From positions 62,001 through 126,000 of the IMG/VR virus record IMGVR_UViG_3300023257_000007: 64,000 nt of DNA. One strand, written 5' to 3'. Within the stretch, counting starts at the first letter, position 1; each line of letters begins with the position of its first letter. Under the pieces are notes generated by a model. The model was not told the origin of the DNA. It saw nothing but the letters and a program-made list of their open reading frames with translations, and did no database searches. The position numbers were made by a program, and so were the translations under genes. This document shows, in pieces, positions 3,936 through 57,864 of this stretch.

Positions 3936-6092
3936 ATGGAAGAAAATACAGAAAATACAAATCAACCAAAATACCCTTGGTTAGCAAAATTTGCAATAAA
4001 TTTAAATGATTATGCATCTAAAGGTAAATTAAAACCAGTAATAGGTAGAGACGAAGAAATTCGTAGAATATTACAAATACTTTCCAGAAAAACTAAAAAT
4101 AATCCAATAGTTATAGGTGAATCAGGTGTTGGAAAAACATCTGTTGTTGAAGCATTAGCCCAAAGAATAGTTGATGGTGATGTACCTGAAAATCTTAAAG
4201 ATAAAGTAATAGCATCTTTAGATTTAGCTACATTAGTTGCTGGTGCAAAATATAAAGGTGAATTCGAAGAAAGAATACAAACCATTGTAAAAGAAATAAT
4301 TGAATCTAATGGTCAAATTATACTTTTTATTGATGAAATTCACACATTAGTTGGTACAGGTGGTGGAAATGGTGCAATGGATGCTGCAGGTATTTTAAAA
4401 CCTATATTATCAAGAGGTGAAATTAGAGCAATTGGTGCAACAACTATTGATGAATATAAAAAATCAATTGAGCAAGATAGAGCATTAGATAGAAGATTTC
4501 AAACAGTTATGATTGATGAGCCTGATAAATTTCAATCAATTTCAATTTTAAGAGGTATTAAAGATAGTTTTGAAAAACATCATGATGTTAGAATAGTAGA
4601 TAGTGCTATTATAAGTGCTGTAGAATTATCAATAAGATATGTATCTGATAGATTTTTACCAGATAAGGCTATTGATTTATTAGATGAAGCTTGTTCTAAA
4701 TTAAGATTAGAAATAAATTCTGTACCAGGTGAAATTGATGAAATATCTAGAAGAATTCAACAATTAGAAATTGAAAGAGAAGGTTTAAGAATGGAAGGAA
4801 ACAATAAAAAAGTTTCAAAAATTACATCTGAAATAGATTCATTAACTGAAAGCTTAAAAACTTTTAATTTACAATGGAACAAAGAAATAGAACTTGTTGA
4901 TAATATTAAAATATTAAAAAAAGATTTAGCTGGATATAATAATGATATCGAAAAATTTAGAAATGAAGCATATTACGAACATGTAGCAAAATTACAATAT
5001 GGTATAATACCAAAAGTAGAACTAGAAATAAAAGAACTAGAAGATAAACTTAAAGAAATACAAAAAGGTGTCCAACTTGTTGATGAAGAAGTTGATGGTG
5101 AAGATATAGCAGAAATTGTAGCAAAATGGACTGGTATACCAGTTTCAAAAATGTTAAAATCTGAAAAAATAAAATTAGTAAATCTTGAAGATGAATTACA
5201 TAAAAGAATTATTGGCCAAAATGAAGCTGTAACAGAATTATCAAACGCAGTAAGAAGAAGTAGATCCGGATTACAAGATACAAAAAAACCAATTGGTTCT
5301 TTTATTTTCTTAGGAACCACCGGAGTTGGTAAAACAGAAACAGCAAAAGCACTAGCTGAATATTTGTTTGATGATGAAAATGCAATGGTAAGAATTGATA
5401 TGAGTGAATATATGGAAAGACATGCCGTAGCTAAATTAATCGGTCCCCCTCCAGGTTATATTGGTTATGAAGAAGGTGGTCAATTAACAGACCAGGTAAG
5501 AAGAAAACCTTATTCAGTAATTTTATTTGATGAAATTGAAAAAGCTCACCCTGATACATTTAATACCTTATTACAAGTATTAGATGATGGTAGATTAACT
5601 GATAATAAAGGTAGAACTGTTGATTTTAAGAACACTATTATTATTATGACTTCTAATATTGGTTCTCATATTATTAGAGAAAATTTTGAAAAATTAACTG
5701 ATGAAAATAGAGAAGAAGTTATTAAAAAAACCAATGATGAAGTAATGGAAGTTTTAAAAAATACTGTAAGACCAGAATTTTTAAATAGAATTGATGAAAT
5801 TGTGACATTTCAACCATTAACAAGAGAAGAAATTAAAAAAATTGTAGTATTACAATTTAACTCAATCAAGAAAAGATTACCAGACGTTGAATTAGAATTA
5901 ACAGAAAAAGCTCTTGATTATTTAACATTAAAATCATATGATCCTCAATTTGGAGCTAGACCAGTTAAGAGAACATTACAAGATACAATTTTAGATGATT
6001 TATCAATGTCAATTTTAAAAGATGAAGTTAAAAAAGATGATGCTATTTTAATTGACTATGATGGTGAGAAAATAACATTTGACAATAAATAG
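3936..6092 (+). CDS. clpB: ClpB AAA+ disaggregase lacking the N-terminal Clp-repeat domain
   Basis: PVIGRDEEIRR, GESGVGKT, FIDEIH, GATT, ALDRRFQ, FLPDKAIDLLDEA, middle coiled-coil, GTTGVGKTE, RIDMSEY, FDEIEKAHP, GRLTD, FGARP. Confidence 0.96.
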   Translation: MEENTENTNQPKYPWLAKFAINLNDYASKGKLKPVIGRDEEIRRILQILSRKTKNNPIVIGESGVGKTSVVEALAQRIVDGDVPENLKDKVIASLDLATLVAGAKYKGEFEERIQTIVKEIIESNGQIILFIDEIHTLVGTGGGNGAMDAAGILKPILSRGEIRAIGATTIDEYKKSIEQDRALDRRFQTVMIDEPDKFQSISILRGIKDSFEKHHDVRIVDSAIISAVELSIRYVSDRFLPDKAIDLLDEACSKLRLEINSVPGEIDEISRRIQQLEIEREGLRMEGNNKKVSKITSEIDSLTESLKTFNLQWNKEIELVDNIKILKKDLAGYNNDIEKFRNEAYYEHVAKLQYGIIPKVELEIKELEDKLKEIQKGVQLVDEEVDGEDIAEIVAKWTGIPVSKMLKSEKIKLVNLEDELHKRIIGQNEAVTELSNAVRRSRSGLQDTKKPIGSFIFLGTTGVGKTETAKALAEYLFDDENAMVRIDMSEYMERHAVAKLIGPPPGYIGYEEGGQLTDQVRRKPYSVILFDEIEKAHPDTFNTLLQVLDDGRLTDNKGRTVDFKNTIIIMTSNIGSHIIRENFEKLTDENREEVIKKTNDEVMEVLKNTVRPEFLNRIDEIVTFQPLTREEIKKIVVLQFNSIKKRLPDVELELTEKALDYLTLKSYDPQFGARPVKRTLQDTILDDLSMSILKDEVKKDDAILIDYDGEKITFDNK

Positions 6093-6803: not shown

Positions 6804-7178
6804 TTGCGTTCAGATCCATTAGGAATAACAGATTTTATCACGAGACCTGAATTTCTATCAAAGTTATCTGAATATTATGATGGTGATATAAATAATATCA
6901 TAACTAAAAATATCTTACAAAGAATCGGTTTTTATAATGCTAGTTTAAACTTCTCAAAAGGCACTTCATATGCTACTACAGGTCCTAATTACTATGATGT
7001 AGAAAAACTCGTTTCTGGTTTTTTGAAACAACCAGATTTTTCTCTAGAAGATTATATTGAAAAATTCATTGATGCTGACGAAGATAGATGGCGAAGTATA
7101 AGGAAAACGTATAAAACAGATAAATTAAAAGAAAAATATAAATACTTTAGCGAAGCTGGTAAACTCGGATTATTTTAA
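6804..7178 (+). CDS. Hypothetical protein with C-terminal EAGKLGLF motif
   Basis: 124-aa ORF with TTG start; C-terminus resembles those of the 22531 and 23226 ORFs. Confidence 0.65.
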   Translation: MRSDPLGITDFITRPEFLSKLSEYYDGDINNIITKNILQRIGFYNASLNFSKGTSYATTGPNYYDVEKLVSGFLKQPDFSLEDYIEKFIDADEDRWRSIRKTYKTDKLKEKYKYFSEAGKLGLF

Positions 7179-7909
7179 GTATTTATATTATCAAGAAGTT
7201 CCTTTAAATATTTTTTCTTATTCGATTTATATTCTTCTTCAATTATTCTAATTAATTTAATATTATTATCTAGACAATATTCATCTAACAATTTATCTAG
7301 ATGAACAACCTTTTCATATTTTTCTGGTGTGCCTAATTTTTCATATAATTCTTTTGATCTATGCCAAATACCATCATATTCAATAAATAATTTCCTGTCA
7401 GAAAAAGTTATATCAACAGATTTACTATCAATTTTATTAAATGTTATTATCCTATGTGATTTAACATTATGTTCACCATATATTTTTTTGAGATACTTTC
7501 TTATTTCACGTTCACCCTTCGAAGAACATCTACTATTATTTGGTCCTCTTAAATTTTGAATACATTTTTCTCTATATTCTAAATCATTATTTAATTTATA
7601 AATAATTGATTTACTTATTTTATCTTTAGTTTCTTTACTATGTTCTCTCGTATTTGCACATGATCGACTACAAAAATATTTTTCTTTAATTGGAAATTTT
7701 TTAGATGGTTCTTTTACATTAAATTTAACACCACAATTATTACATATTACTTCATAATCAGTTACAACTCCTTGCTCATTTATCATTCTTTTGTGTCTGG
7801 CTTTAATAAGATTATCCTTTGAAGGTTTTTTATGTTTCCATCTTATGTGATTGGCTTTAATTTTAGCATTATCAAATTCTTCATCACAATATTCACAAGT
7901 ATATTTCAT
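7175..7909 (-). CDS. Free-standing putative homing endonuclease: C2H2-like and CxxC zinc fingers plus Vsr/DUF559-like PD-(D/E)xK domain
   Basis: CEYC..HIRWKH, CNNCG..YFCSRSC, SSKGEREI, VDITF..LFIEYDGIWH, IKLIRI; own TATATA at 7929-7934. Confidence 0.8.
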   Translation of the reverse strand: MKYTCEYCDEEFDNAKIKANHIRWKHKKPSKDNLIKARHKRMINEQGVVTDYEVICNNCGVKFNVKEPSKKFPIKEKYFCSRSCANTREHSKETKDKISKSIIYKLNNDLEYREKCIQNLRGPNNSRCSSKGEREIRKYLKKIYGEHNVKSHRIITFNKIDSKSVDITFSDRKLFIEYDGIWHRSKELYEKLGTPEKYEKVVHLDKLLDEYCLDNNIKLIRIIEEEYKSNKKKYLKELLDNINT

Positions 7910-7980: not shown

Positions 7981-8007
7981 AAAAAAGCCACATAATGTGG
8001 CTTTTTT
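7981..8007 (-). terminator. Intrinsic terminator immediately after tmRNA
   Basis: aaaaaagccacat/atgtggctttttt inverted repeat, a few nt from the tmRNA 3' end. Confidence 0.8.
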
Positions 8008-8028
8008 TAGTGGAGCATTCGGGATTCG

Positions 8029-8245
8029 CTTTTTTATCCAAAAATTTCTTAATGGCGTGGACTATATCATCAACCTAATTAGGTTGCCGGGCGCTCTAGG
8101 ATGTATGTCATCTAGTCTCTGAACCTTCCATTTCTAAATTAATAGCTTGGCTGCTGATTGCCGTATCTTTTTTTAAAAGACTTAGGGTTCCAGCAATTCA
8201 CCCAGTTTTTTCATTATATGTTACCATATAAGGGGTCCGAATTTA
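8029..8245 (-). mobile_element. Group I intron (217 nt, no ORF; P7.1 hairpin suggests subgroup IA) inserted in the tmRNA T-loop
   Basis: P AATTGCTGGAA (8188-8198), Q AATCAGCAG (8151-8159), R GTTCAGAGACTA (8113-8124), S GATATAGTCC (8059-8068); P1 GGGUU|..GACCC with U:G at the 5' splice site; P10 AUUCG/CGAAU; P3 CUGGGUG/CGCCCGG; terminal G at 8029. Confidence 0.93.
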
Positions 8246-8404
8246 AACCCGAGTTCACAACAAGTTCCAGTTCGCTTTCTACAGATATATTTTATTTTTT
8301 CACAAACAAACAAAATATTCAATCTTTTTTATTTCAGGAAAATTGAAAAATCCCTATTCTATTTTATTTAAATACGATTAGACGTGTCGTACTTGTTGAT
8401 TTGT

Positions 8405-8491
8405 CTAGGCAACCACTTCCAGAGCAGATTCAACAACTGCTTCTTGTGAAGTTACAATATCAAAGATATCATCGGCTATTTCTATATTGCC
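8405..8491 (-). other. tmRNA tag reading frame (A)GNIEIADDIFDIVTSQEAVVESALEVVA*
   Basis: Resume codon GGC after TTAAAT; 28 codons to TAG; hydrophobic/Ala C-terminus. Confidence 0.8.
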
Positions 8492-8594
8492 ATTTAAAAT
8501 TGTTTATCTCCGTATTTTACTTGAACTGAGATTTGACAAGATCTGCTTACTAACCTTCATCGAGAGTGTCTAAAGCCTGTATGCCCCATATTTT

Positions 8595-8747
8595 TTAAGA
8601 ACGTTGTCTACCTTGACCTCTACCTACACCTCTACCATTTCTTTGTCCATTATTAGAATTATTTTCTTCTGATGGTTTACATTTACCTAAACCTCTTCCT
8701 GTTCTAGGTCCGTTTTCATTTGGGCCTTTTCCATTTTGATTTGCCAT
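8595..8747 (-). CDS. Small Gly/Arg-rich protein, DUF5320-like (not in ORF track)
   Basis: 50 aa MANQNGKGPNENGPRTGRGLGKC...GRGVGRGQGRQRS, matching the GxGPxTGRGxGxC signature; TATATA at 8764-8769. Confidence 0.75.
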   Translation of the reverse strand: MANQNGKGPNENGPRTGRGLGKCKPSEENNSNNGQRNGRGVGRGQGRQRS

Positions 8748-11568: not shown

Positions 11569-12636
11569 TTGATTAGTTACTTCGGAGGAAAAGCAAAAAT
11601 GGGTGAGTGGATATATCCATTTATTCCAAAAAACATTAAAACATACGTAGAACCTTTTTCAGGTGCTTTTTGGATTTATTTTAATACAAAAAATGATTTC
11701 ACACATTGTGATAAAGTTGTATATAACGATATTAACAAATATATGTTAAATCTTATGTATTGTGCTAAAGATCATCAAAAATTACTTGCAAAAATTGAAA
11801 GTGAGTTAAAACCAGGTGGATTTTTATACAATCCACACAAATTTAAAACACCAGAATATAAACAAGTTTATAAAGATTTGTATTATGAATATAAACATTG
11901 TAGAGATAAAAATAAATTCTTAGAAGATCCTATTTTTGAAATAGGTGACTATGATGCAGCAGTTAAATATGCATTTTTAATAACTTCAGCGTTTAATGGT
12001 TGTTTTCCTAAAGCTGCAGGTTTTTCAGGTATTGCAACCAATGGAAAATATAAATTACAAACATTTATTAATAAACTAAATAAAAAAGCAATTCAAGAAA
12101 AACTTGAAAGTATCACAGACTTTGAATTATTTGATTTTGAAGATTTAATTAAAAAATATGATAGTGAAGAAACTTACTTCTATTTAGATCCACCTTATTT
12201 CGATCCAAAAGGTAAAAGACTTGATTGGTATGGTGTTAAAGATGATAGTATGTTTGGTGTTGGTGGTCATGAAAGATTAGCTAATTTATTACAAAATACT
12301 AAAGCAAAATGGTCTCTATCTTACTATAATTATCCACAATTAGAAAAATGGTATCCAAATACAAAATACAATTGGGAATCTAAAGATTTCTTTAGAAGTT
12401 CTGCTTCTTTTTCAGACAACAAAGATGTGAAAGGAACTGAAATATTGATAATGAATTATAACTTTGAAGAGGAAGAGTATAAAAATAAGATGAAAAAATC
12501 TATACCTACAATAAAAGAAAAATTTAAAGATTGTACTGAAGAAGAATTTCCAAATAGAGAAAACGATAAAATATTACTCAACAAATTAAAAGATATTGGT
12601 GATAAAATGAACGAAAACGATGACTTCTGGAACTAA
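11569..12636 (+). CDS. dam: DNA adenine methyltransferase (Dam/D12 class)
   Basis: ISYFGGK, YVEPFSG, VYNDIN, YFYLDPPY, HERLA, TEILIMNY; TTG start. Confidence 0.9.
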   Translation: MISYFGGKAKMGEWIYPFIPKNIKTYVEPFSGAFWIYFNTKNDFTHCDKVVYNDINKYMLNLMYCAKDHQKLLAKIESELKPGGFLYNPHKFKTPEYKQVYKDLYYEYKHCRDKNKFLEDPIFEIGDYDAAVKYAFLITSAFNGCFPKAAGFSGIATNGKYKLQTFINKLNKKAIQEKLESITDFELFDFEDLIKKYDSEETYFYLDPPYFDPKGKRLDWYGVKDDSMFGVGGHERLANLLQNTKAKWSLSYYNYPQLEKWYPNTKYNWESKDFFRSSASFSDNKDVKGTEILIMNYNFEEEEYKNKMKKSIPTIKEKFKDCTEEEFPNRENDKILLNKLKDIGDKMNENDDFWN

Positions 12637-13282: not shown

Positions 13283-14206
13283 TCATATTATAAAGAATGA
13301 TTCTAATATTTGTATAACATTTTCATCATAACGTATTCTTATCAAATCGATATTGTTTTCTTTACAATATCGATTTTTTATTTCGTCATTGTTTTGTGTT
13401 TCTTTTAATTTTTTCCAAATTTTATTTTCTCTAAAATGTTGTTCACCATCATATTCAATACACAAATTATGTTTTGGTAAATAAAAATCAAAAGGTAATG
13501 GTAACTTATTTCTACAATCTTTAAATCTAAATTGAATTTCAAAGTCAATATTTCTATCTGATAGATAATTTCTTATTTGTGTTTCACCATGAGACATTCT
13601 ACATATTGGACAACCTTTACCAGATAGGTGGTTGTTCGGTGTTTGATTAAATGTACCATGTTTATCACATATAATTTCAACTTTTGAAATTGCATTTACA
13701 TATTTAACATCACAATAATCATACATATCACCGTGTTTTAATTTTGATTTTTTAATAAATTCTTTCGTATTAGATCTATATGTACCATCACACTTTGGAC
13801 ATCCAGAAACATAATGAGATCTTGGTTCTTGTTCAAAAACACCGTGTTCTGGACACACAATTTTAACCTTGGTTTTATTATTTTCATATTCAACTAAATC
13901 ATAAATATATTTATCACCGTGTTTTAATTTTGATTTTCTAATAAAATCATCGTTTTTAAGAGAAAACAATTCGTTTTTATGTTCTGATGAACATTTTGTA
14001 CAACCACCACCTCTCATATGGACATCTGGTCTTTGTTTAAAAATTCCATGTTTATTGCAAATGATATTAACACATAAACTATTTTTAATATAATTCACTA
14101 AAGAATAATCATATCTAAGTCCATGTTTTTTGATAGATTTTTCAACAAAAATCATAGTATTATACTTTACAGGCATATTTTTAATAATTTTTAAGTAATG
14201 ATTCAA
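13283..14206 (-). CDS. Putative homing endonuclease: three C..HG..H..G.GC..C (DUF723-like) repeats plus Vsr/DUF559-like nuclease
   Basis: Repeated YDY..V.Y....V.I.C..HG.F.Q.P..H..G.GC..C; C-terminal LPFDFYLP..NLCIEYDGEQH, LIRI. Confidence 0.85.
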   Translation of the reverse strand: MNHYLKIIKNMPVKYNTMIFVEKSIKKHGLRYDYSLVNYIKNSLCVNIICNKHGIFKQRPDVHMRGGGCTKCSSEHKNELFSLKNDDFIRKSKLKHGDKYIYDLVEYENNKTKVKIVCPEHGVFEQEPRSHYVSGCPKCDGTYRSNTKEFIKKSKLKHGDMYDYCDVKYVNAISKVEIICDKHGTFNQTPNNHLSGKGCPICRMSHGETQIRNYLSDRNIDFEIQFRFKDCRNKLPLPFDFYLPKHNLCIEYDGEQHFRENKIWKKLKETQNNDEIKNRYCKENNIDLIRIRYDENVIQILESFFII

Positions 14207-20718: not shown

Positions 20719-21783
20719 TTATACCTCCAAATAATTAAAAGGTCCTTTAATACCTTTATTTAACAATACTTTATACAATAATTTTATTGCATCTTTTACG
20801 TCTTTTTTATGAACAGTTTCTACTGTTGTGTGCATATATCTCATACCCATTTTCAATAATCCTGTTGGAATACCATGAGGATAAGAATAAGAATCTGCAT
20901 TTGTTCCTGAACTTCGTCCCATCGCAATTAATTGATAGGGTAATTTCTCATCATTGCAAACATCTTTCAAAAGTTTTAAAACATTCTTGTGAATAGATGG
21001 AGCATTAGCCAAAACAATACCTTCACCAGCAGTTATAGATCCTAATTTAGCAGCATCATATGCTGGACTTGTAGTGTCATGTGTCACATCAATTGCAATC
21101 GCAACATTAGGTTCTATTTTATTTGAAGCCATTTTAGCGCCATATAAACCTACTTCTTCTTGAACTGCATTAACAATAACTAATTTATAGTCAAGTTTTA
21201 TTTTCTTTTTACTCAATTTCTTTAGAACTTGTGATGTAATATAACCACCGATTTTATCATCTAATGATCTACCACAATGATATTCTCCTAAATCCATATA
21301 ACCATCTGTCATTGTAATAGGAGTTCCAACCTCAATTCCTTTATCTAAAACTTCTTTTTTACTTGAAACACCAATATCAATAAAACACTTACTTATTTCT
21401 ACTTTAAATGTCTTATCTTGAACGTGAATGGCTGGATGACCAAAAACACCATTAACTTTACCTTTTTCACTCCAAATATCAACCCTAGATGAAGGAGTAA
21501 TATGCACATCAGAACCTCCAAGTCTACCAACTTTGATAAAGCCTTTATCAGTTATATCATGTACAAAAAATCCAATTTCGTCAGCATGAGCATCAATTAA
21601 AACAGTATAATCGCTGTTTAAGTCACCAAAATATGCATATGCGTTACCATAATCATCAACATCTACTTTTTTAGCATATTGTTTAATATAGTTAACCCAC
21701 ACCATTTGACCACCAAGTAAAACTTCATACCCACTAGGTGATGGTGTATTAACGTATTTTTTCAAAAATTCTTTTTTATTCAT
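20719..21783 (-). CDS. M42-family metallo-aminopeptidase
   Basis: PSPSGYE, DAHADEIG, RSLDDKIG, VQEEVGLYGA, AIAIDVTH, GTNAD, MRYMHT. Confidence 0.92.
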   Translation of the reverse strand: MNKKEFLKKYVNTPSPSGYEVLLGGQMVWVNYIKQYAKKVDVDDYGNAYAYFGDLNSDYTVLIDAHADEIGFFVHDITDKGFIKVGRLGGSDVHITPSSRVDIWSEKGKVNGVFGHPAIHVQDKTFKVEISKCFIDIGVSSKKEVLDKGIEVGTPITMTDGYMDLGEYHCGRSLDDKIGGYITSQVLKKLSKKKIKLDYKLVIVNAVQEEVGLYGAKMASNKIEPNVAIAIDVTHDTTSPAYDAAKLGSITAGEGIVLANAPSIHKNVLKLLKDVCNDEKLPYQLIAMGRSSGTNADSYSYPHGIPTGLLKMGMRYMHTTVETVHKKDVKDAIKLLYKVLLNKGIKGPFNYLEV

Positions 21784-21844: not shown

Positions 21845-22534
21845 TTAATAATTCATTATTAATAGTTCTTCGTGATAAGAATATTTTTTCTTAACGATGT
21901 TACAGAATTTAGAGTATTCTGGTACTAGATAAAAATCATAACAAGATAACATGAACTTACCTTTAATGTTTTTTAATAAGAAAAATAAATCTTCATGTGA
22001 TTCCTTTGTAAAATCATGATTATCGTATCTATGTTCAAAACCATAATACGGTGGGTCAATATAGAAAAATGTATTTCTATAATCGAATTTATTTATCACA
22101 TATTTATAATCTTCGTTTAATACGTAATTTACATATTGATATTTATCTTTAAAATCTGATATATTACCCCAAGACATTTTATCACTATAACCAGATCCAA
22201 TATCTCCAACCGCATTACAATGACATAATAAATATAAATATTTCAAAGATTTTTCTTGTTGAGTTCCTTCATTAATAGTGTCTTTAAATTCAAGATATTT
22301 TTCTTCACTTGATTCTATATTCTCAATTAGATTTGTAAAATGTGGGTTTTTTAAGTGTCGAAATAAATAATAATTATCTTTATTAATATCATTATATACA
22401 CTAATAAGAGGATTGTTAATTGACAATCCTATTCCATACATACCACCAAAAGGTTCAACATAACATGTAAAGTTAGGTGTGTAAGGCAAAATGAATTTTT
22501 TAAATTTGGATTTTTCTCCAAGATAGGGTATCAT
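21845..22534 (-). CDS. Second, compact Dam-like DNA adenine methyltransferase
   Basis: IPYLGEK, YVEPFGG, VYNDIN, FFYIDPPY, FMLS, ELLIMNY. Confidence 0.85.
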   Translation of the reverse strand: MIPYLGEKSKFKKFILPYTPNFTCYVEPFGGMYGIGLSINNPLISVYNDINKDNYYLFRHLKNPHFTNLIENIESSEEKYLEFKDTINEGTQQEKSLKYLYLLCHCNAVGDIGSGYSDKMSWGNISDFKDKYQYVNYVLNEDYKYVINKFDYRNTFFYIDPPYYGFEHRYDNHDFTKESHEDLFFLLKNIKGKFMLSCYDFYLVPEYSKFCNIVKKKYSYHEELLIMNY

Positions 22535-34478: not shown

Positions 34479-36200
34479 TTAATTCAAAAAACCATTTTTT
34501 AAAATACCCCACTCAAAACATATATGACCAGAATTATTTATTCTGTAAATACCCCTTTCTAACATTATATCATGCTCTGTTCTATTTGCATCATAACCAT
34601 CTTTAACCAATGTTTGTTTTCTATAATTATATCTATGCCTTCTAACACCATCAACTATGTAATGATAACCTGGTTTTGTTGTGTGACTCCTATTAAAATT
34701 TAAATTATCATAAAGATTGCCTTTACTCCAACTTCTATCAGCATAAGAAACTATTTTTTTCGGATCATAATTTTTAATAAAATATTTAAACAATTTACTA
34801 GCACCACCAACAATATTTGTGTTTAATTTGTTGCAAAACCTTAATAACTCAAAATCATATTTTTTAATAACACCTATACCCAATCTATTCTTACCAAACG
34901 TCATTAAAGAAACTAATTCATTTTCATAATATAATCCTAATTTAACACTAGATCCAACAAAACCTTGTATATGATTATTATCTAAAAATTCTCTTATTAG
35001 TTTATTATCGTTAATTTCCTTTATTTGTGTTTTTCTAGCATAAATTTTATTTGGTGTTTTACCTAATTTATTTAATATCATTGATTTAACTATATTTTGT
35101 TTATATTTCCAATCATCTTCATAAATATGGATTAATTGAATATCCTTTTCTTCACATTTTTCTGTTTTATTTAAATGATATCTATCAGATTTATATAATT
35201 CATTATGCCAATATAAACCATTAAATTCAAAAGCTAATTTTAAATCTGGTAAATAAATGTCTAATTCTAATGGCTTTATTATATTTCTTTTATTATTTAA
35301 AATTGTTTTGTCATAATTCGATTTAATATAATTTAAGAAATCAATTTCAAGTCCAGAAACTGATTTTAAAATAGGATTGCATTTAGTACATAACAAAGTA
35401 TTAGATCTTCGTCTACTATTCAAAAGAACATAACTTATTTCAAATTCGTGTCCTTTTTCACACATCATTAAATATTTTTTTTCTTCTAAATTTAAACTTA
35501 TTACATCATAATCTTCATAATATTTTAAATATTTATTCATGATTGTTTTTCTTAAACTTTTAATCATTCTGTCTTTTAAATCAATATTATGTAATGGTAC
35601 AATCACACCATATTTTTCTTTCATTGTTCTTTGTCTTTTAATTTTAACTAAATCCAATTTTGAAACATTATCAACTCCATATTTACTCAAACACGTTTCT
35701 TTATATCTATTATAAATTTCAACTGATTTTAATGGACTACTGACATTATAATTATCCTTTAGTGTTTTTAAAGATTTTTTATGAATTTCTTCATTTTGAA
35801 TAGGTGAATTATAACCATATTTTTTAATATTAGTTTTGATAATCTTTTCTTTTACTAAAATATTTTCTGATGGTGTTTTTGTACCAAATTTATCTAAACA
35901 TGTTTGCATTCTTTTATTTTTAACATGATTACTTTTATTCATGCATTTCTTAGAACAAAAAGTATAATATCCAATATTAGAATTCTTAAATTTGACAAAA
36001 TTACCACATTCACATATTACAATATTTTTAATATCATTATACCAATGATAAACTTGTTGCTTAAATGGTAAATCATCTAAACCATTTTCAATTACATATT
36101 TTTGTATTTCTTCTAGTATACTAGTAAAATACTTTTCGAGATAATTCTTTCTGAACATTTTACCAGATGAATCTAGATTTTCACTAAAAATACTTTTCAT
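34479..36200 (-). CDS. Putative homing endonuclease (CL.KYG repeats plus Hef/Vsr-like PD-(D/E)xK and GNAT-like C-terminal part)
   Basis: CECG..YTFCSKKC, CLDKFG/CLSKYG repeats, ELDIYLP..AFEFNGLYWH, IHIYEDDW, FL..NHIQG, ELLRFC, GGASKL, SYADR. Confidence 0.85.
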   Translation of the reverse strand: MKSIFSENLDSSGKMFRKNYLEKYFTSILEEIQKYVIENGLDDLPFKQQVYHWYNDIKNIVICECGNFVKFKNSNIGYYTFCSKKCMNKSNHVKNKRMQTCLDKFGTKTPSENILVKEKIIKTNIKKYGYNSPIQNEEIHKKSLKTLKDNYNVSSPLKSVEIYNRYKETCLSKYGVDNVSKLDLVKIKRQRTMKEKYGVIVPLHNIDLKDRMIKSLRKTIMNKYLKYYEDYDVISLNLEEKKYLMMCEKGHEFEISYVLLNSRRRSNTLLCTKCNPILKSVSGLEIDFLNYIKSNYDKTILNNKRNIIKPLELDIYLPDLKLAFEFNGLYWHNELYKSDRYHLNKTEKCEEKDIQLIHIYEDDWKYKQNIVKSMILNKLGKTPNKIYARKTQIKEINDNKLIREFLDNNHIQGFVGSSVKLGLYYENELVSLMTFGKNRLGIGVIKKYDFELLRFCNKLNTNIVGGASKLFKYFIKNYDPKKIVSYADRSWSKGNLYDNLNFNRSHTTKPGYHYIVDGVRRHRYNYRKQTLVKDGYDANRTEHDIMLERGIYRINNSGHICFEWGILKNGFLN

Positions 36201-57033: not shown

Positions 57034-57864
57034 ATGATTATTTGTGAAATTTGTAAAAAAGAATTAAAAAATAGAAAATCTTTAGGATCACATTTGTGTA
57101 AATCACATAAAGAAATATCAACTAAAAAATATTATGACAAATATTTTCTCATAGAAAATGAAAATATTTGTAAAAATGAAAATTGTAATAATACAACTAA
57201 TCAATTTAAAGGTTTAACTAAAGGTTATATTAAATCATACTGTTCAATTTCTTGTGCTAGAAAATCAAAAGAAGTTATAGAAAAACAGAAAAAAACATGT
57301 TTAGAAAAATATGATAATGAAAATTATAGAAATATAAACTCATATAAAAAAACGTGTTTAGAAAAATATGGTAAAGAAAATGCTTTATGTAAAGGCACTA
57401 AATCATATAATAAAAAAATAAATACATGTTTAGAAAAATATGGCGTTGAAAATGTATTTAGTGATGATGATATATGTAAAAAAATAAGATTAACAAATGA
57501 AAAAAGTGGTTTTTGGCAAAAAAGAGATGTGTTAAATAATTTTCAACATTATTATGAAGAAGTTAAGAAACTAACAAACAAAAACAAAAAATTATTATTT
57601 GAAAAATGGAATGGTGACGATTATTATGATAATGAATATATTTTTAATAATTTTGTATTAAATAATAATGATAACAATTATCCTAGTGTAGATCACAAAA
57701 AATCAATAAAATATTGTTTCATAAATAAAATATCACCAAAAAAGTGTTCAAATATTGACAATTTGTGCATTACTAAAAGAATTATTAATATTATTAAAAA
57801 TAGTGATGATGAATTAGAATTTAAAAATCAATTAAAACAAATAGTAATAGATAAAAAAGATTAA
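57034..57864 (+). CDS. Putative homing endonuclease-like protein: C2H2 finger, CLEKYG repeats, C-terminal HNH-like DH..N motif
   Basis: CEIC..SHL..SH, three KTCLEKY(G/D) repeats, PSVDHKKS..NL.IT..IN..K; own TATATA at 57019-57024. Confidence 0.72.
   Translation: MIICEICKKELKNRKSLGSHLCKSHKEISTKKYYDKYFLIENENICKNENCNNTTNQFKGLTKGYIKSYCSISCARKSKEVIEKQKKTCLEKYDNENYRNINSYKKTCLEKYGKENALCKGTKSYNKKINTCLEKYGVENVFSDDDICKKIRLTNEKSGFWQKRDVLNNFQHYYEEVKKLTNKNKKLLFEKWNGDDYYDNEYIFNNFVLNNNDNNYPSVDHKKSIKYCFINKISPKKCSNIDNLCITKRIINIIKNSDDELEFKNQLKQIVIDKKD

What the first reader, a model, noticed from the sequence alone, without database searches (positions are those of the whole stretch)
8011..8587. Phage tmRNA interrupted by a self-splicing group I intron in the T-loop
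Seen: removing 8245-8029 restores a perfect T-arm (TCGGG-TT|CGAAT-CCCGA) and an Ala acceptor stem with G3:U70. The 217-nt insert has textbook P, Q, R and S elements, P1 with U:G at the 5' splice site, P10 with the 3' exon, P3, P7.1, P8 and a terminal G. Established: a group I intron at the tmRNA T-loop has been reported in Clostridium botulinum, and some phages encode tmRNA. Inference: the combination in a phage is at least rare; tmRNA maturation would depend on splicing, and automated annotation probably misses this gene.
Basis: partly seen in the sequence, partly recalled or inferred. Interest (0 to 1): 0.85.

Follow-up and report, generated by a model that had tools for sequence, protein, structure and literature searches.

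The report
Jumbo-phage tmRNA gene split by intron
A 348-kb phage from a salt lake carries a ribosome-rescue RNA (tmRNA) gene interrupted in its T-loop by a small self-splicing-type group I intron with a likely homing-nuclease gene beside it; this gene form is known from bacteria and is here found in phages, where standard annotation misses it.

Summary
On the minus strand, 8587-8011 is a one-piece tmRNA gene, and a 217-nt group I intron at 8245-8029 splits its T-loop.

- **Intron:** Rfam Intron_gpI scores 100.2 bits (E 1.8e-26).
- **tmRNA:** ARAGORN finds nothing in the genomic sequence. Once 8245-8029 is removed it calls a 361-nt tmRNA.
- **Splice sites:** only UU|CGAAU gives a U before the 5' splice site paired to G, a terminal G, a 5-bp P1, a 5-bp P10 and a 7-nt T-loop.
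- **Structure:** twelve related introns support the core. 95% of cells pair and 28 pairs show compensatory changes.
- **Relatives:** intron-less phage tmRNAs carry exactly the predicted ligated T-loop. One of them scores 75.6 bits on Rfam tmRNA.

The insertion site is T-loop subsite 3, reported so far only from Bacteroidia. The window is a jumbo myophage contig. At least six other phage lineages, including the 735-kb phage LR756501, have the same arrangement. The same intron family also sits in T-loops of phage tRNA-Ala and tRNA-Pro genes.

An endonuclease-like ORF (7909-7175) lies directly downstream. In a related lineage, the intron and this ORF are present together or absent together.

Splicing itself is untested, because no RNA run was listed. 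My verdict is a real new member of a known gene form, of moderate to high interest.

The parts
8246..8587 (-). tmRNA exon 1 (342 nt): acceptor 5' strand GGGGCAU, D-loop analogue, tag reading frame, body, T-stem 5' strand and the first two T-loop bases (UU).
   Evidence: Sequence. ARAGORN on the spliced form. Alignment with other phage tmRNAs.
8029..8245 (-). Group I intron, 217 nt, no ORF. The internal guide is at 8242-8233 (P10 part AUUCG 8242-8238, P1 part GACCC 8237-8233). Helices: P2 8230-8214, P3 8205-8201 with 8091-8087, P4 8195-8190 with 8157-8152, P5 8186-8161, P6 8151-8123, P7 8119-8113 with 8066-8059, P7.1 hairpin 8112-8100, P8 8086-8071, P9 8054-8039. Terminal G at 8029.
   Evidence: Rfam 100.2 bits. 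Family alignment and covariation. Helix coordinates. Single-sequence fold reproduces P2-P9, z = -2.5.
8011..8028 (-). tmRNA exon 2 (18 nt): T-loop CGAAU, T-stem 3' strand CCCGA, acceptor 3' strand AUGCUCC and discriminator A. The next bases, 8010-8008, are CTA, so CCA must be completed after transcription.
8405..8491 (-). Tag reading frame. The likely resume codon is GGC at 8491-8489, in the AAAUGGC context shared by eight related tmRNAs. That gives the 28-aa tag GNIEIADDIFDIVTSQEAVVESALEVVA and the stop TAG at 8407-8405. ARAGORN instead starts at GAT 8473, giving 22 aa.
7981..8007 (-). Intrinsic-terminator-like hairpin with a T run, 3 nt after the CTA trailer.
   Evidence: 12 pairs. Two terminator-like sites were found in the region against 0.6 expected.
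7175..7909 (-). Free-standing endonuclease-like ORF (244 aa) with an N-terminal C2H2-like zinc finger, a second Cys cluster, a NUMOD3-like motif and a C-terminal nuclease-like domain. It is the candidate homing endonuclease partner of the ORF-less intron.
   Evidence: phrog_559 'HNH endonuclease', E 1.6e-11. 48% identical to the ORF at the same place in LR756501, which also hits 'homing endonuclease' and 'intron encoded nuclease' families. Atlas look-alikes are all viral and carry DUF559, NUMOD3 and zf-C2H2. Presence and absence track the intron.

Best explanation
This is a functional intron-form tmRNA gene of a jumbo myophage whose host is probably in Bacteroidota.

Proposed pathway, all inferred from anatomy:
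1. The gene is transcribed and ends at the hairpin 8007-7981.
2. The 217-nt group I intron folds. Its internal guide pairs with the last five exon-1 bases (P1, with U.G at the splice site). Free guanosine attacks after U8246.
3. The guide then holds exon 2 (P10) and the terminal G8029 enters the G-site. The exons are ligated to give the T-loop UUCGAAU.
4. The 360-nt RNA is trimmed at the 5' end and its CCA is completed.
5. AlaRS charges it through G3.U70, and it works with SmpB in trans-translation. Stalled nascent chains receive a long acidic tag ending in VVA.

The intron is a mobile element, not a regulatory invention. Close relatives have the same tmRNA without it. It most likely spreads at the DNA level together with the adjacent free-standing endonuclease gene, in the manner of collaborative homing. 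Its target would be the conserved T-loop coding sequence of tmRNA and tRNA genes.

Shown here: the gene anatomy, membership of the intron family, covariation, presence/absence polymorphism, and linkage of intron and endonuclease ORF.
Inferred: splicing, aminoacylation, tagging and homing.
For: **Intron**
- Intron_gpI scores 100.2 bits, E 1.8e-26.
- Only the split UU|CGAAU gives U-1 together with a terminal G. The neighbouring registers give A or C at the last intron position.
- P1 is 5 bp with U.G and P10 is 5 bp.
- Across 12 related introns, 95.0% of cells are paired, against 32-43% when partners are slid. 28 pairs have compensatory changes. The covariation score is 0.459 against 0.06-0.10.
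- P1 co-varies with the exon: GGGUU/GACCC, GUGGGU/GCCCAC and CGGU/GCCG.

**tmRNA**
- ARAGORN calls a tmRNA only after splicing.
- An HMM of nine intron-less phage tmRNAs aligns across the ligated junction, E 1.2e-6, and hits nothing in the unspliced 64 kb.
- The intron-less relative L040 scores 75.6 bits on Rfam tmRNA. It and other relatives carry GGGTTCGAATCCC at the predicted junction.
- The tag frame is kept open and starts at AAAU-GGC in eight relatives.

**Mobility**
- Intron-containing and intron-less pairs: L001/L068/L070 against L040/L069, L071 against L066, L008 against L041/L045, and L013 against L055.
- L001, L068 and L070 have tmRNA, then the endonuclease ORF, then a DHFR-like gene. 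L040 and L069 have tmRNA followed directly by the DHFR-like gene.
- A homologous ORF follows intron-bearing tRNA-Ala genes in L022, L036 and L007.
- Collaborative homing is a described mechanism (PMC3984707).

**Phage and host**
- Tail sheath, E 1.4e-82, and baseplate hub.
- The window is IMG/VR contig IMGVR_UViG_3300023257_000007.
- ClpB look-alikes are mostly from Bacteroidota.
- Subsite 3 is otherwise reported only from Bacteroidia.
Against: - There is no RNA evidence. No RNA run was listed, so neither splicing nor expression is shown.
- The Rfam tmRNA model gives only 8.2 bits on the unspliced DNA, and the spliced sequence could not be given to Infernal.
- The pseudoknots were not examined.
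- No SmpB was found among the ORFs scanned with Pfam (54 in all), and the other 284 kb of the genome were not available.
- P9 in the window has two non-canonical pairs.
- No intron-less allele of this particular lineage was found, so recent mobility is shown only in sister lineages.
- Three intron-bearing tmRNA loci (L008, L010, L020) show no adjacent endonuclease ORF.
- The nuclease family of ORF 7909-7175 is unresolved. Pfam and NCBIfam give no significant nuclease domain and the structure model failed.
Confidence: 0.8

Rival explanations
1. The gene makes a spliced tmRNA-like RNA whose job is not ordinary ribosome rescue. It could be a phage-specific tagging system, in which the long acidic tag marks proteins for a phage or host factor. 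It could also be a competitor of the host tmRNA.
For: The tags are 22-33 aa, against the usual 10 aa. One subfamily shares the internal motif EDMMSIPTS. The window's tag ends in VVA rather than LAA. A CDS-less phage tmRNA that inhibits the host tmRNA is on record (PMC11915505). A ClpB gene lies 2 kb away.
Against: The tRNA-like domain, the resume context and the in-frame stop are all canonical. A relative, L071, ends in the canonical ALAA. Nothing here links ClpB to the tag.
Confidence: 0.15
2. The intron no longer splices, so the gene is an inactivated tmRNA pseudogene carried passively.
For: No RNA data are available. P9 is weak in the window. The sister lineage L001/L068/L070 has A in place of the terminal G, which shows that decay or change can occur in this family.
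Against: All core elements are intact. U-1.G, the terminal G, P1 and P10 are all present in the window. The sequence is identical in two independently assembled 345-348-kb genomes and in several other runs. Both exons stay fully tmRNA-like.
Confidence: 0.08
3. The contig is not a phage but a bacterial or plasmid fragment, and this is simply the host's own intron-form ssrA gene.
For: Subsite-3 intron-form tmRNAs are reported from Bacteroidia genomes. The window carries cellular-type genes: ClpB, an M42 peptidase and an IMPDH-like gene.
Against: The window encodes a tail sheath, a baseplate hub, a clamp-loader-like protein and several homing endonuclease-like genes. The contig is in IMG/VR and a second contig of 344,634 bp (L005) is identical across the tmRNA region fetched. 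The 735-kb phage LR756501 has the same locus. The pattern scan found 32 viral stretches but only 3 among 185,579 species genomes, and none of the 3 is a tmRNA.
Confidence: 0.04

Closest known systems
Intron-form bacterial tmRNA genes. First seen in Clostridium botulinum (Williams 2002, from my own knowledge). 883 unique sequences are catalogued in PMC11915505.
   Same: A one-piece tmRNA with a group I intron inside the T-loop. The splice rules are U-1 and a terminal G. Most of these introns are short and lack an ORF. The subsite used here (3, UU|CGAAU) is one of the four catalogued.
   Different: All catalogued subsite-3 cases are from Bacteroidia genomes. That survey searched only RefSeq viruses and reports no phage intron form. 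Here the carrier is a jumbo phage. At 217 nt the intron is shorter than the 293-nt average of the catalogued ones. The nuclease candidate is free-standing and beside the gene, whereas the 4% of catalogued introns with a nuclease carry a LAGLIDADG ORF inside the intron.
Phage-encoded tmRNAs: 79 in the tmRNA database, and those reported in huge phages by Al-Shayeb et al. 2020 (PMC7162821).
   Same: A phage carries its own tmRNA alongside tRNAs and other translation-related genes.
   Different: Those were found with ARAGORN, which cannot see intron forms. The copy in the 735-kb phage of that study, LR756501, is itself intron-interrupted.
[quoted passage not shown] Examples are cyanophage psbA with F-CphI (PMC6083498) and T4 mobE with the nrdB intron (PMC2790892). 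Reviewed in PMC3984707.
   Same: An ORF-less phage intron with an endonuclease-like gene directly beside the interrupted gene. Intron and ORF are jointly present or absent in syntenic relatives. The intron core resembles the psbA introns of a cyanophage.
   Different: The interrupted gene is an RNA gene (tmRNA or tRNA), not a protein gene. No cleavage data exist. The nuclease family is unresolved.
[quoted passage not shown]
   Same: A self-splicing-type intron in a tRNA-shaped RNA, where exon regularity fixes the splice sites.
   Different: The known tRNA cases are all in the anticodon loop. This intron family uses the T-loop, in tmRNA and also in phage tRNA-Ala and tRNA-Pro genes.

Membership tests
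tmRNA (one-piece, Rfam RF00023) | Seven-bp acceptor stem with G3.U70 and a discriminator base. | tested here: met
   GGGGCAU pairs with AUGCUCC, followed by A8011. The unconstrained fold of the spliced RNA forms this stem.
tmRNA (one-piece, Rfam RF00023) | T-arm with a 5-bp stem and a 7-nt T-loop. | tested here: met
   Met only after removal of 8245-8029: UCGGG, UUCGAAU, CCCGA. The junction is identical to that of intron-less relatives.
tmRNA (one-piece, Rfam RF00023) | Internal tag reading frame with a resume codon and an in-frame stop. | tested here: met
   ARAGORN calls a tag. The frame is open from GGC 8491 to TAG 8405, and the AAAU-GGC context is shared by eight relatives. The exact resume codon is not settled.
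tmRNA (one-piece, Rfam RF00023) | Covariance-model score at or above the gathering score. | tested here: inconclusive
   The unspliced DNA scores 8.2 bits against 47. The spliced sequence cannot be given to the Rfam tool. The homologous intron-less L040 scores 75.6 bits, and an HMM of intron-less relatives hits the spliced form at E 1.2e-6.
tmRNA (one-piece, Rfam RF00023) | Pseudoknots PK1-PK4 and the long H2 helix. | not tested
   No pseudoknot analysis was done.
tmRNA (one-piece, Rfam RF00023) | An SmpB partner is available. | tested here: inconclusive
   No SmpB among the 54 window ORFs scanned with Pfam.
Group I intron (Rfam RF00028) | Covariance-model score at or above the gathering score. 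| tested here: met
   100.2 bits against 50, E 1.8e-26, with the full model length matched.
Group I intron (Rfam RF00028) | The base before the 5' splice site (U-1) forms a U.G wobble in P1 with the internal guide. | tested here: met
   U8246 pairs with G8237. P1 is 5 bp.
Group I intron (Rfam RF00028) | A terminal G at the 3' splice site, and P10 pairing with the 3' exon. | tested here: met
   G8029 is the last intron base. P10 is CGAAU/AUUCG, 5 bp, adjacent to P1 in the guide.
Group I intron (Rfam RF00028) | A conserved P3-P9 core supported by covariation. | tested here: met
   55 pairs, 95% of cells paired, 28 compensatory pairs. No shuffle of 500 reaches the observed values, and slid controls give 32-43% paired.
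Group I intron (Rfam RF00028) | Self-splicing with guanosine. | not testable with these tools
   No RNA run was listed. This needs a bench assay.
Group I intron, subgroup IA | P7.1/P7.2 insertion between P7 and P3'. | tested here: inconclusive
   The window has one short hairpin there (8112-8100). Relatives have a longer two-part element. No formal subgroup classifier was available.
Intron-form tmRNA (PMC11915505) | The intron lies within the T-loop at one of subsites 2, 3, 7 or 8. | tested here: met
   Subsite 3, between loop bases 2 and 3.
Collaborative homing cassette (PMC3984707) | An ORF-less intron with a free-standing endonuclease gene next to the interrupted gene. | tested here: met
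   ORF 7909-7175 starts 71 nt after the terminator hairpin (7981). PHROG endonuclease hits.
Collaborative homing cassette (PMC3984707) | Intron and endonuclease gene are gained or lost together. | tested here: met
   Met in the sister lineage: L001/L068/L070 have both and L040/L069 have neither. This could not be tested for the window's own lineage. Three intron-bearing loci lack such an ORF.
Collaborative homing cassette (PMC3984707) | The endonuclease cuts the intron-less allele at or near the insertion site. | not testable with these tools
   This needs a cleavage assay.

The most novel reading that the evidence does not exclude
A two-part selfish cassette circulates among jumbo phages of Bacteroidota. 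It consists of a roughly 220-nt ORF-less group I intron and a neighbouring zinc-finger/NUMOD3 endonuclease gene. It homes into the almost universal T-loop coding sequence (GGTTCGAATCC) of both tmRNA and tRNA genes.

If true, these would be the first T-loop group I introns described in tRNAs and the first intron-form tmRNAs described in viruses. The 'Bacteroidia-only' subsite-3 cases in the tmRNA database would then come from these phages, by transfer or by binning of phage contigs into bacterial genome assemblies. Because the target sequence is shared by host tRNA and tmRNA genes, the nuclease might also cut competing phages or the host.
Probability: 0.4. Interest if true: 0.7.

Novelty: new member of a known kind. 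Interest (0 to 1): 0.55.

Why it matters
**Annotation.** Intron-form tmRNAs are invisible to ARAGORN and to routine Rfam scans. Phage tmRNA counts are therefore underestimates, including those for the flagship 735-kb phage.

**Range of the gene form.** It extends intron-form tmRNA from bacteria to viruses. Phages become a plausible vehicle for moving these introns between lineages.

**A testable system.** Several matched loci exist with and without the intron and its nuclease partner. The system is small: a 217-nt ribozyme and a 244-aa nuclease. It could be used to study how ORF-less introns spread and why the T-loop is a preferred landing site.

**tRNA introns.** The T-loop introns in phage tRNA genes suggest that current tRNA intron searches, which look only at the anticodon loop, miss a class.

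Tried and rejected
**Default detectors**
- The whole-window Rfam scan at gathering thresholds found only tRNAs. A 36-kb multi-locus scan also missed the intron in L003 and L005. Short stretches were needed.

**RNA and read evidence**
- No RNA sequencing run was listed.
- Contigs of four other DNA runs all carry the intron-containing allele. None skips 8029-8245.

**Searches for an intron-less allele of this lineage**
- The exact spliced junction has no match in metagenome contigs.

**Search for bacterial counterparts**
- The scan of 185,579 species genomes found 3 stretches and no T-loop-intron tmRNA. The Bacteroidia subsite-3 introns could therefore not be compared. The pattern fixes the spacing between the R and S core elements, so all counts are lower bounds.

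**Nuclease family of ORF 7909-7175**
- Pfam gave only weak zinc-finger and NUMOD3 hits.
- NCBIfam gave nothing.
- The PDB profile search gave only zinc fingers at E > 0.05.
- The three-sequence job gave a mean pLDDT of 39.6, too poor for a fold search.

**Other**
- The promoter scan was no better than chance.
- Alternative splice registers, one base to either side, were rejected because the last intron base becomes A or C.
- In one search my script picked a distant false P1 for L020. The homologous site gives 4 bp.
- Synonymous versus non-synonymous counts in the tag are too few to show selection.

Full report
**1. What is in the sequence**

Read on the minus strand, the region starts at 8587 with GGGGCAU. 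This is 8 nt after the stop codon of a 50-aa DUF5320 ORF (8747-8595). It ends with AUGCUCC-A at 8018-8011, followed by CTA. An intrinsic-terminator-like hairpin lies at 8007-7981. The two ends form a 7-bp acceptor stem with G3.U70.

Between 8245 and 8029 lies a 217-nt insert.
- Rfam Intron_gpI matches 8256-8038 over the full model length at 100.2 bits (gathering 50, E 1.8e-26).
- ARAGORN finds no gene in the genomic sequence. It calls a 361-nt tmRNA with both tRNA-like domains and a tag once 8245-8029 is deleted.
- Of the three possible registers in the T-loop, only UU|CGAAU has U before the 5' splice site and G as the last intron base.
- The internal guide 8242-8233 pairs its 3' half with exon 1 (GGGUU/GACCC, with U.G at the splice site). 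Its 5' half pairs with exon 2 (CGAAU/AUUCG).

**2. Is the intron real and intact?**

A pattern built from the R and S core elements plus the 3' half of a T-loop found 32 stretches in IMG/VR. Twelve of them, the window included, are introns of one family sitting in T-loops (alignment A1).

On a structure with P1-P9 and P7 written as a pseudoknot:
- 95.0% of cells are standard pairs, against 32-43% when partners are slid by 1-3 columns.
- 28 of 55 pairs have changes on both sides.
- The covariation score is 0.459, against 0.06-0.10 for the slid controls.
- No shuffle of 500 reaches any observed measure.

RNAalifold also pairs the T-stem halves across the intron, with compensatory changes. P1 follows the exon sequence: GGGUU/GACCC, GUGGGU/GCCCAC and CGGU/GCCG. 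The window's intron alone folds into P2-P9 with z = -2.5. The window holds a single copy (nhmmer).

**3. Is the spliced product a tmRNA?**

The Rfam tmRNA model gives only 8.2 bits on the interrupted DNA, and the tool cannot take a spliced sequence. The indirect evidence is strong.
- Scans for tag-coding and 5'-domain motifs recovered many phage tmRNAs.
- Sixteen or more of them are uninterrupted, and ARAGORN calls them directly.
- One, L040, scores 75.6 bits on Rfam tmRNA, E 1.5e-29.
- These intron-less genes read GGGTTCGAATCCC or close variants where the window's exons would be joined.
- An HMM built from nine of them aligns to the spliced window RNA across the junction (positions 235-360, E 1.2e-6). 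It finds nothing in the unspliced 64 kb.

The tag frame is open from GGC 8491 to TAG 8405. Eight relatives share the AAAU-GGC context and keep the frame. I therefore prefer GGC as the resume codon, which gives a 28-aa tag ending VVA. ARAGORN prefers GAT 8473, which gives 22 aa.

These tags are two to three times the usual 10 aa (PMC11915505).

**4. Whose gene is it?**

The window is IMG/VR contig IMGVR_UViG_3300023257_000007 (348,222 bp). A twin contig of 344,634 bp is identical over the gene. Both come from salt-lake metagenomes.

The window encodes a tail sheath (E 1.4e-82), a baseplate hub, a clamp-loader-like ATPase, a sigma factor and seven tRNAs. It is a jumbo myophage.

Two leads point to a Bacteroidota host. 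Look-alikes of its N-terminally truncated ClpB are mostly from Bacteroidota. Subsite 3 is otherwise reported only from Bacteroidia. The host assignment is an inference.

**5. Distribution**

Intron-form tmRNAs at subsite 3 also occur in:
- LR756501, the 735-kb phage (L001; intron 96.1 bits), and metagenome contigs of the same lineage (L068, L070);
- L008, L010, L011, L013, L020, L053 (cut by the contig end) and L071.

Close intron-less counterparts exist:
- L040 is 87% identical to spliced L001, and L069 has a tag one residue different.
- L066 pairs with L071.
- L041 and L045 are 80% identical to L008.
- L055 is 82% identical to L013.

So the intron is a presence/absence polymorphism, as expected for a mobile element. 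No intron-less copy was found for the window's own lineage. The exact junction has no match in metagenome contigs, and contigs of four further runs all carry the intron.

**6. The neighbouring ORF**

Directly downstream, on the same strand, is a 244-aa ORF (7909-7175).
- It hits PHROG 559, 'HNH endonuclease', at E 1.6e-11.
- It is 48% identical to the ORF in the same position in L001. That ORF also hits 'homing endonuclease' and 'intron encoded nuclease' families.
- Its N-terminal half is shared with ORFs that follow intron-bearing tRNA-Ala genes in L022, L036 and L007.
- Atlas look-alikes are all viral and carry DUF559, NUMOD3 and C2H2 domains (a lead only).

In L001, L068 and L070 the gene order is tmRNA with intron, this ORF, then a DHFR-like gene. 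In L040 and L069 it is tmRNA without intron followed directly by the DHFR-like gene.

Other intron-bearing loci have different endonuclease-like neighbours: L011 has an endonuclease VII-like ORF and L035 an HNH ORF. L008, L010 and L020 show none.

This matches collaborative homing, in which an ORF-less intron and a free-standing endonuclease converge on one target site (PMC3984707; F-CphI with psbA, PMC6083498). No cleavage evidence exists, and the catalytic family is unresolved.

**7. Comparison with what is known**

Intron-form tmRNA is an established gene form. [quoted passage not shown] That survey used only RefSeq viruses and lists 79 phage tmRNAs without mentioning an intron form.

The huge-phage study found tmRNAs with ARAGORN and mentions no introns. 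Four literature searches found no report of a phage intron-form tmRNA. This is absence in the held library, not proof of absence.

I therefore file it as a new member of a known kind. The phage carrier, the free-standing nuclease partner and the spill-over into tRNA T-loops are the new aspects.

**8. Verdict**

Confidence that this is an intron-form tmRNA gene of a phage is high. Confidence that it splices and works in trans-translation is good but inferential. The homing-cassette reading is plausible, at about 0.4-0.5. Interest is 0.55.

Noticed in passing
L007 9143-9373; L022 2275-2504; L036 2671-2898; L025 484-706; L035 3060-3286: The same intron family interrupts the T-loop of phage tRNA-Ala(TGC) genes (subsite 2 in L007, L022 and L036; subsite 3 in L025) and of a tRNA-Pro(TGG) gene (L035). 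ARAGORN calls each tRNA only after the intron is removed. The tRNA intron survey I read knows group I introns only in the anticodon loop.
   Followed up: partly
L001 about 1740-1745; also L068 and L070: In the lineage of the 735-kb phage the last intron base is A, not G (TTTCA|CGAAT). This holds in three independent assemblies. The P7 base pair next to the G-binding pair is A-U there instead of G-C (columns 154/234). L071 has the same P7 variant but keeps the terminal G. Whether this intron can complete exon ligation is unexplained.
   Followed up: partly
window 3936-6092 (+): A ClpB disaggregase lacking the N-terminal domain. It matches TIGR03346 at 1051 bits over profile positions 145-852. 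It lies 2 kb from the tmRNA, and an M42 aminopeptidase is at 20719-21783. This may be a protein-quality-control theme; no link was tested.
   Followed up: partly
window 8595-8747 (-): A 50-aa glycine- and arginine-rich ORF of family DUF5320 (E 1.6e-8) ends 8 nt before the tmRNA 5' end. The tmRNA may be co-transcribed with it.
   Followed up: no
window 34479-36200 (-), 57034-57864 (+), 13283-14206 (-): Further free-standing homing-endonuclease-like genes in the window. ORF 34479-36200 hits phrog_3339 'homing endonuclease' at E 2e-133. DUF7487 occurs in two ORFs. ORF 13283-14206 shares the C-terminal nuclease-like domain with the L001 ORF.
   Followed up: no
window 8038-8256; L003; L005: Rfam scans of long AT-rich stretches drop this 100-bit intron at the filter stage. 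Default annotation pipelines would miss both the intron and the tmRNA.
   Followed up: yes
window 8113-8203: In four salt-lake and marine DNA runs the intron core attracts many other contigs that diverge outside it, with depth up to about 127. Related group I introns are therefore abundant in these communities.
   Followed up: no
window 8588-8607; L001 1125-1147; L010 and L011 upstream of the tmRNA: A shared motif, GTTCTT(T/A), then a few bases, then TATGGGG, precedes the tmRNA 5' end in four diverged loci. L010 and L011 also have TATATTTG, which from memory resembles the Bacteroidota -7 promoter element. This is a possible promoter or processing signal.
   Followed up: no
L008, L013, L041-L062 (tag regions): One phage tmRNA subfamily has long tags with a conserved internal motif, EDMMSIPTS(I/L)T, and variable ends (LAA, VAA, ELV, VLA). 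The conservation inside the tag is unusual and unexplained.
   Followed up: no
window 11569-12636 (+), 21845-22534 (-): Two D12-class N6-adenine DNA methyltransferase genes.
   Followed up: no
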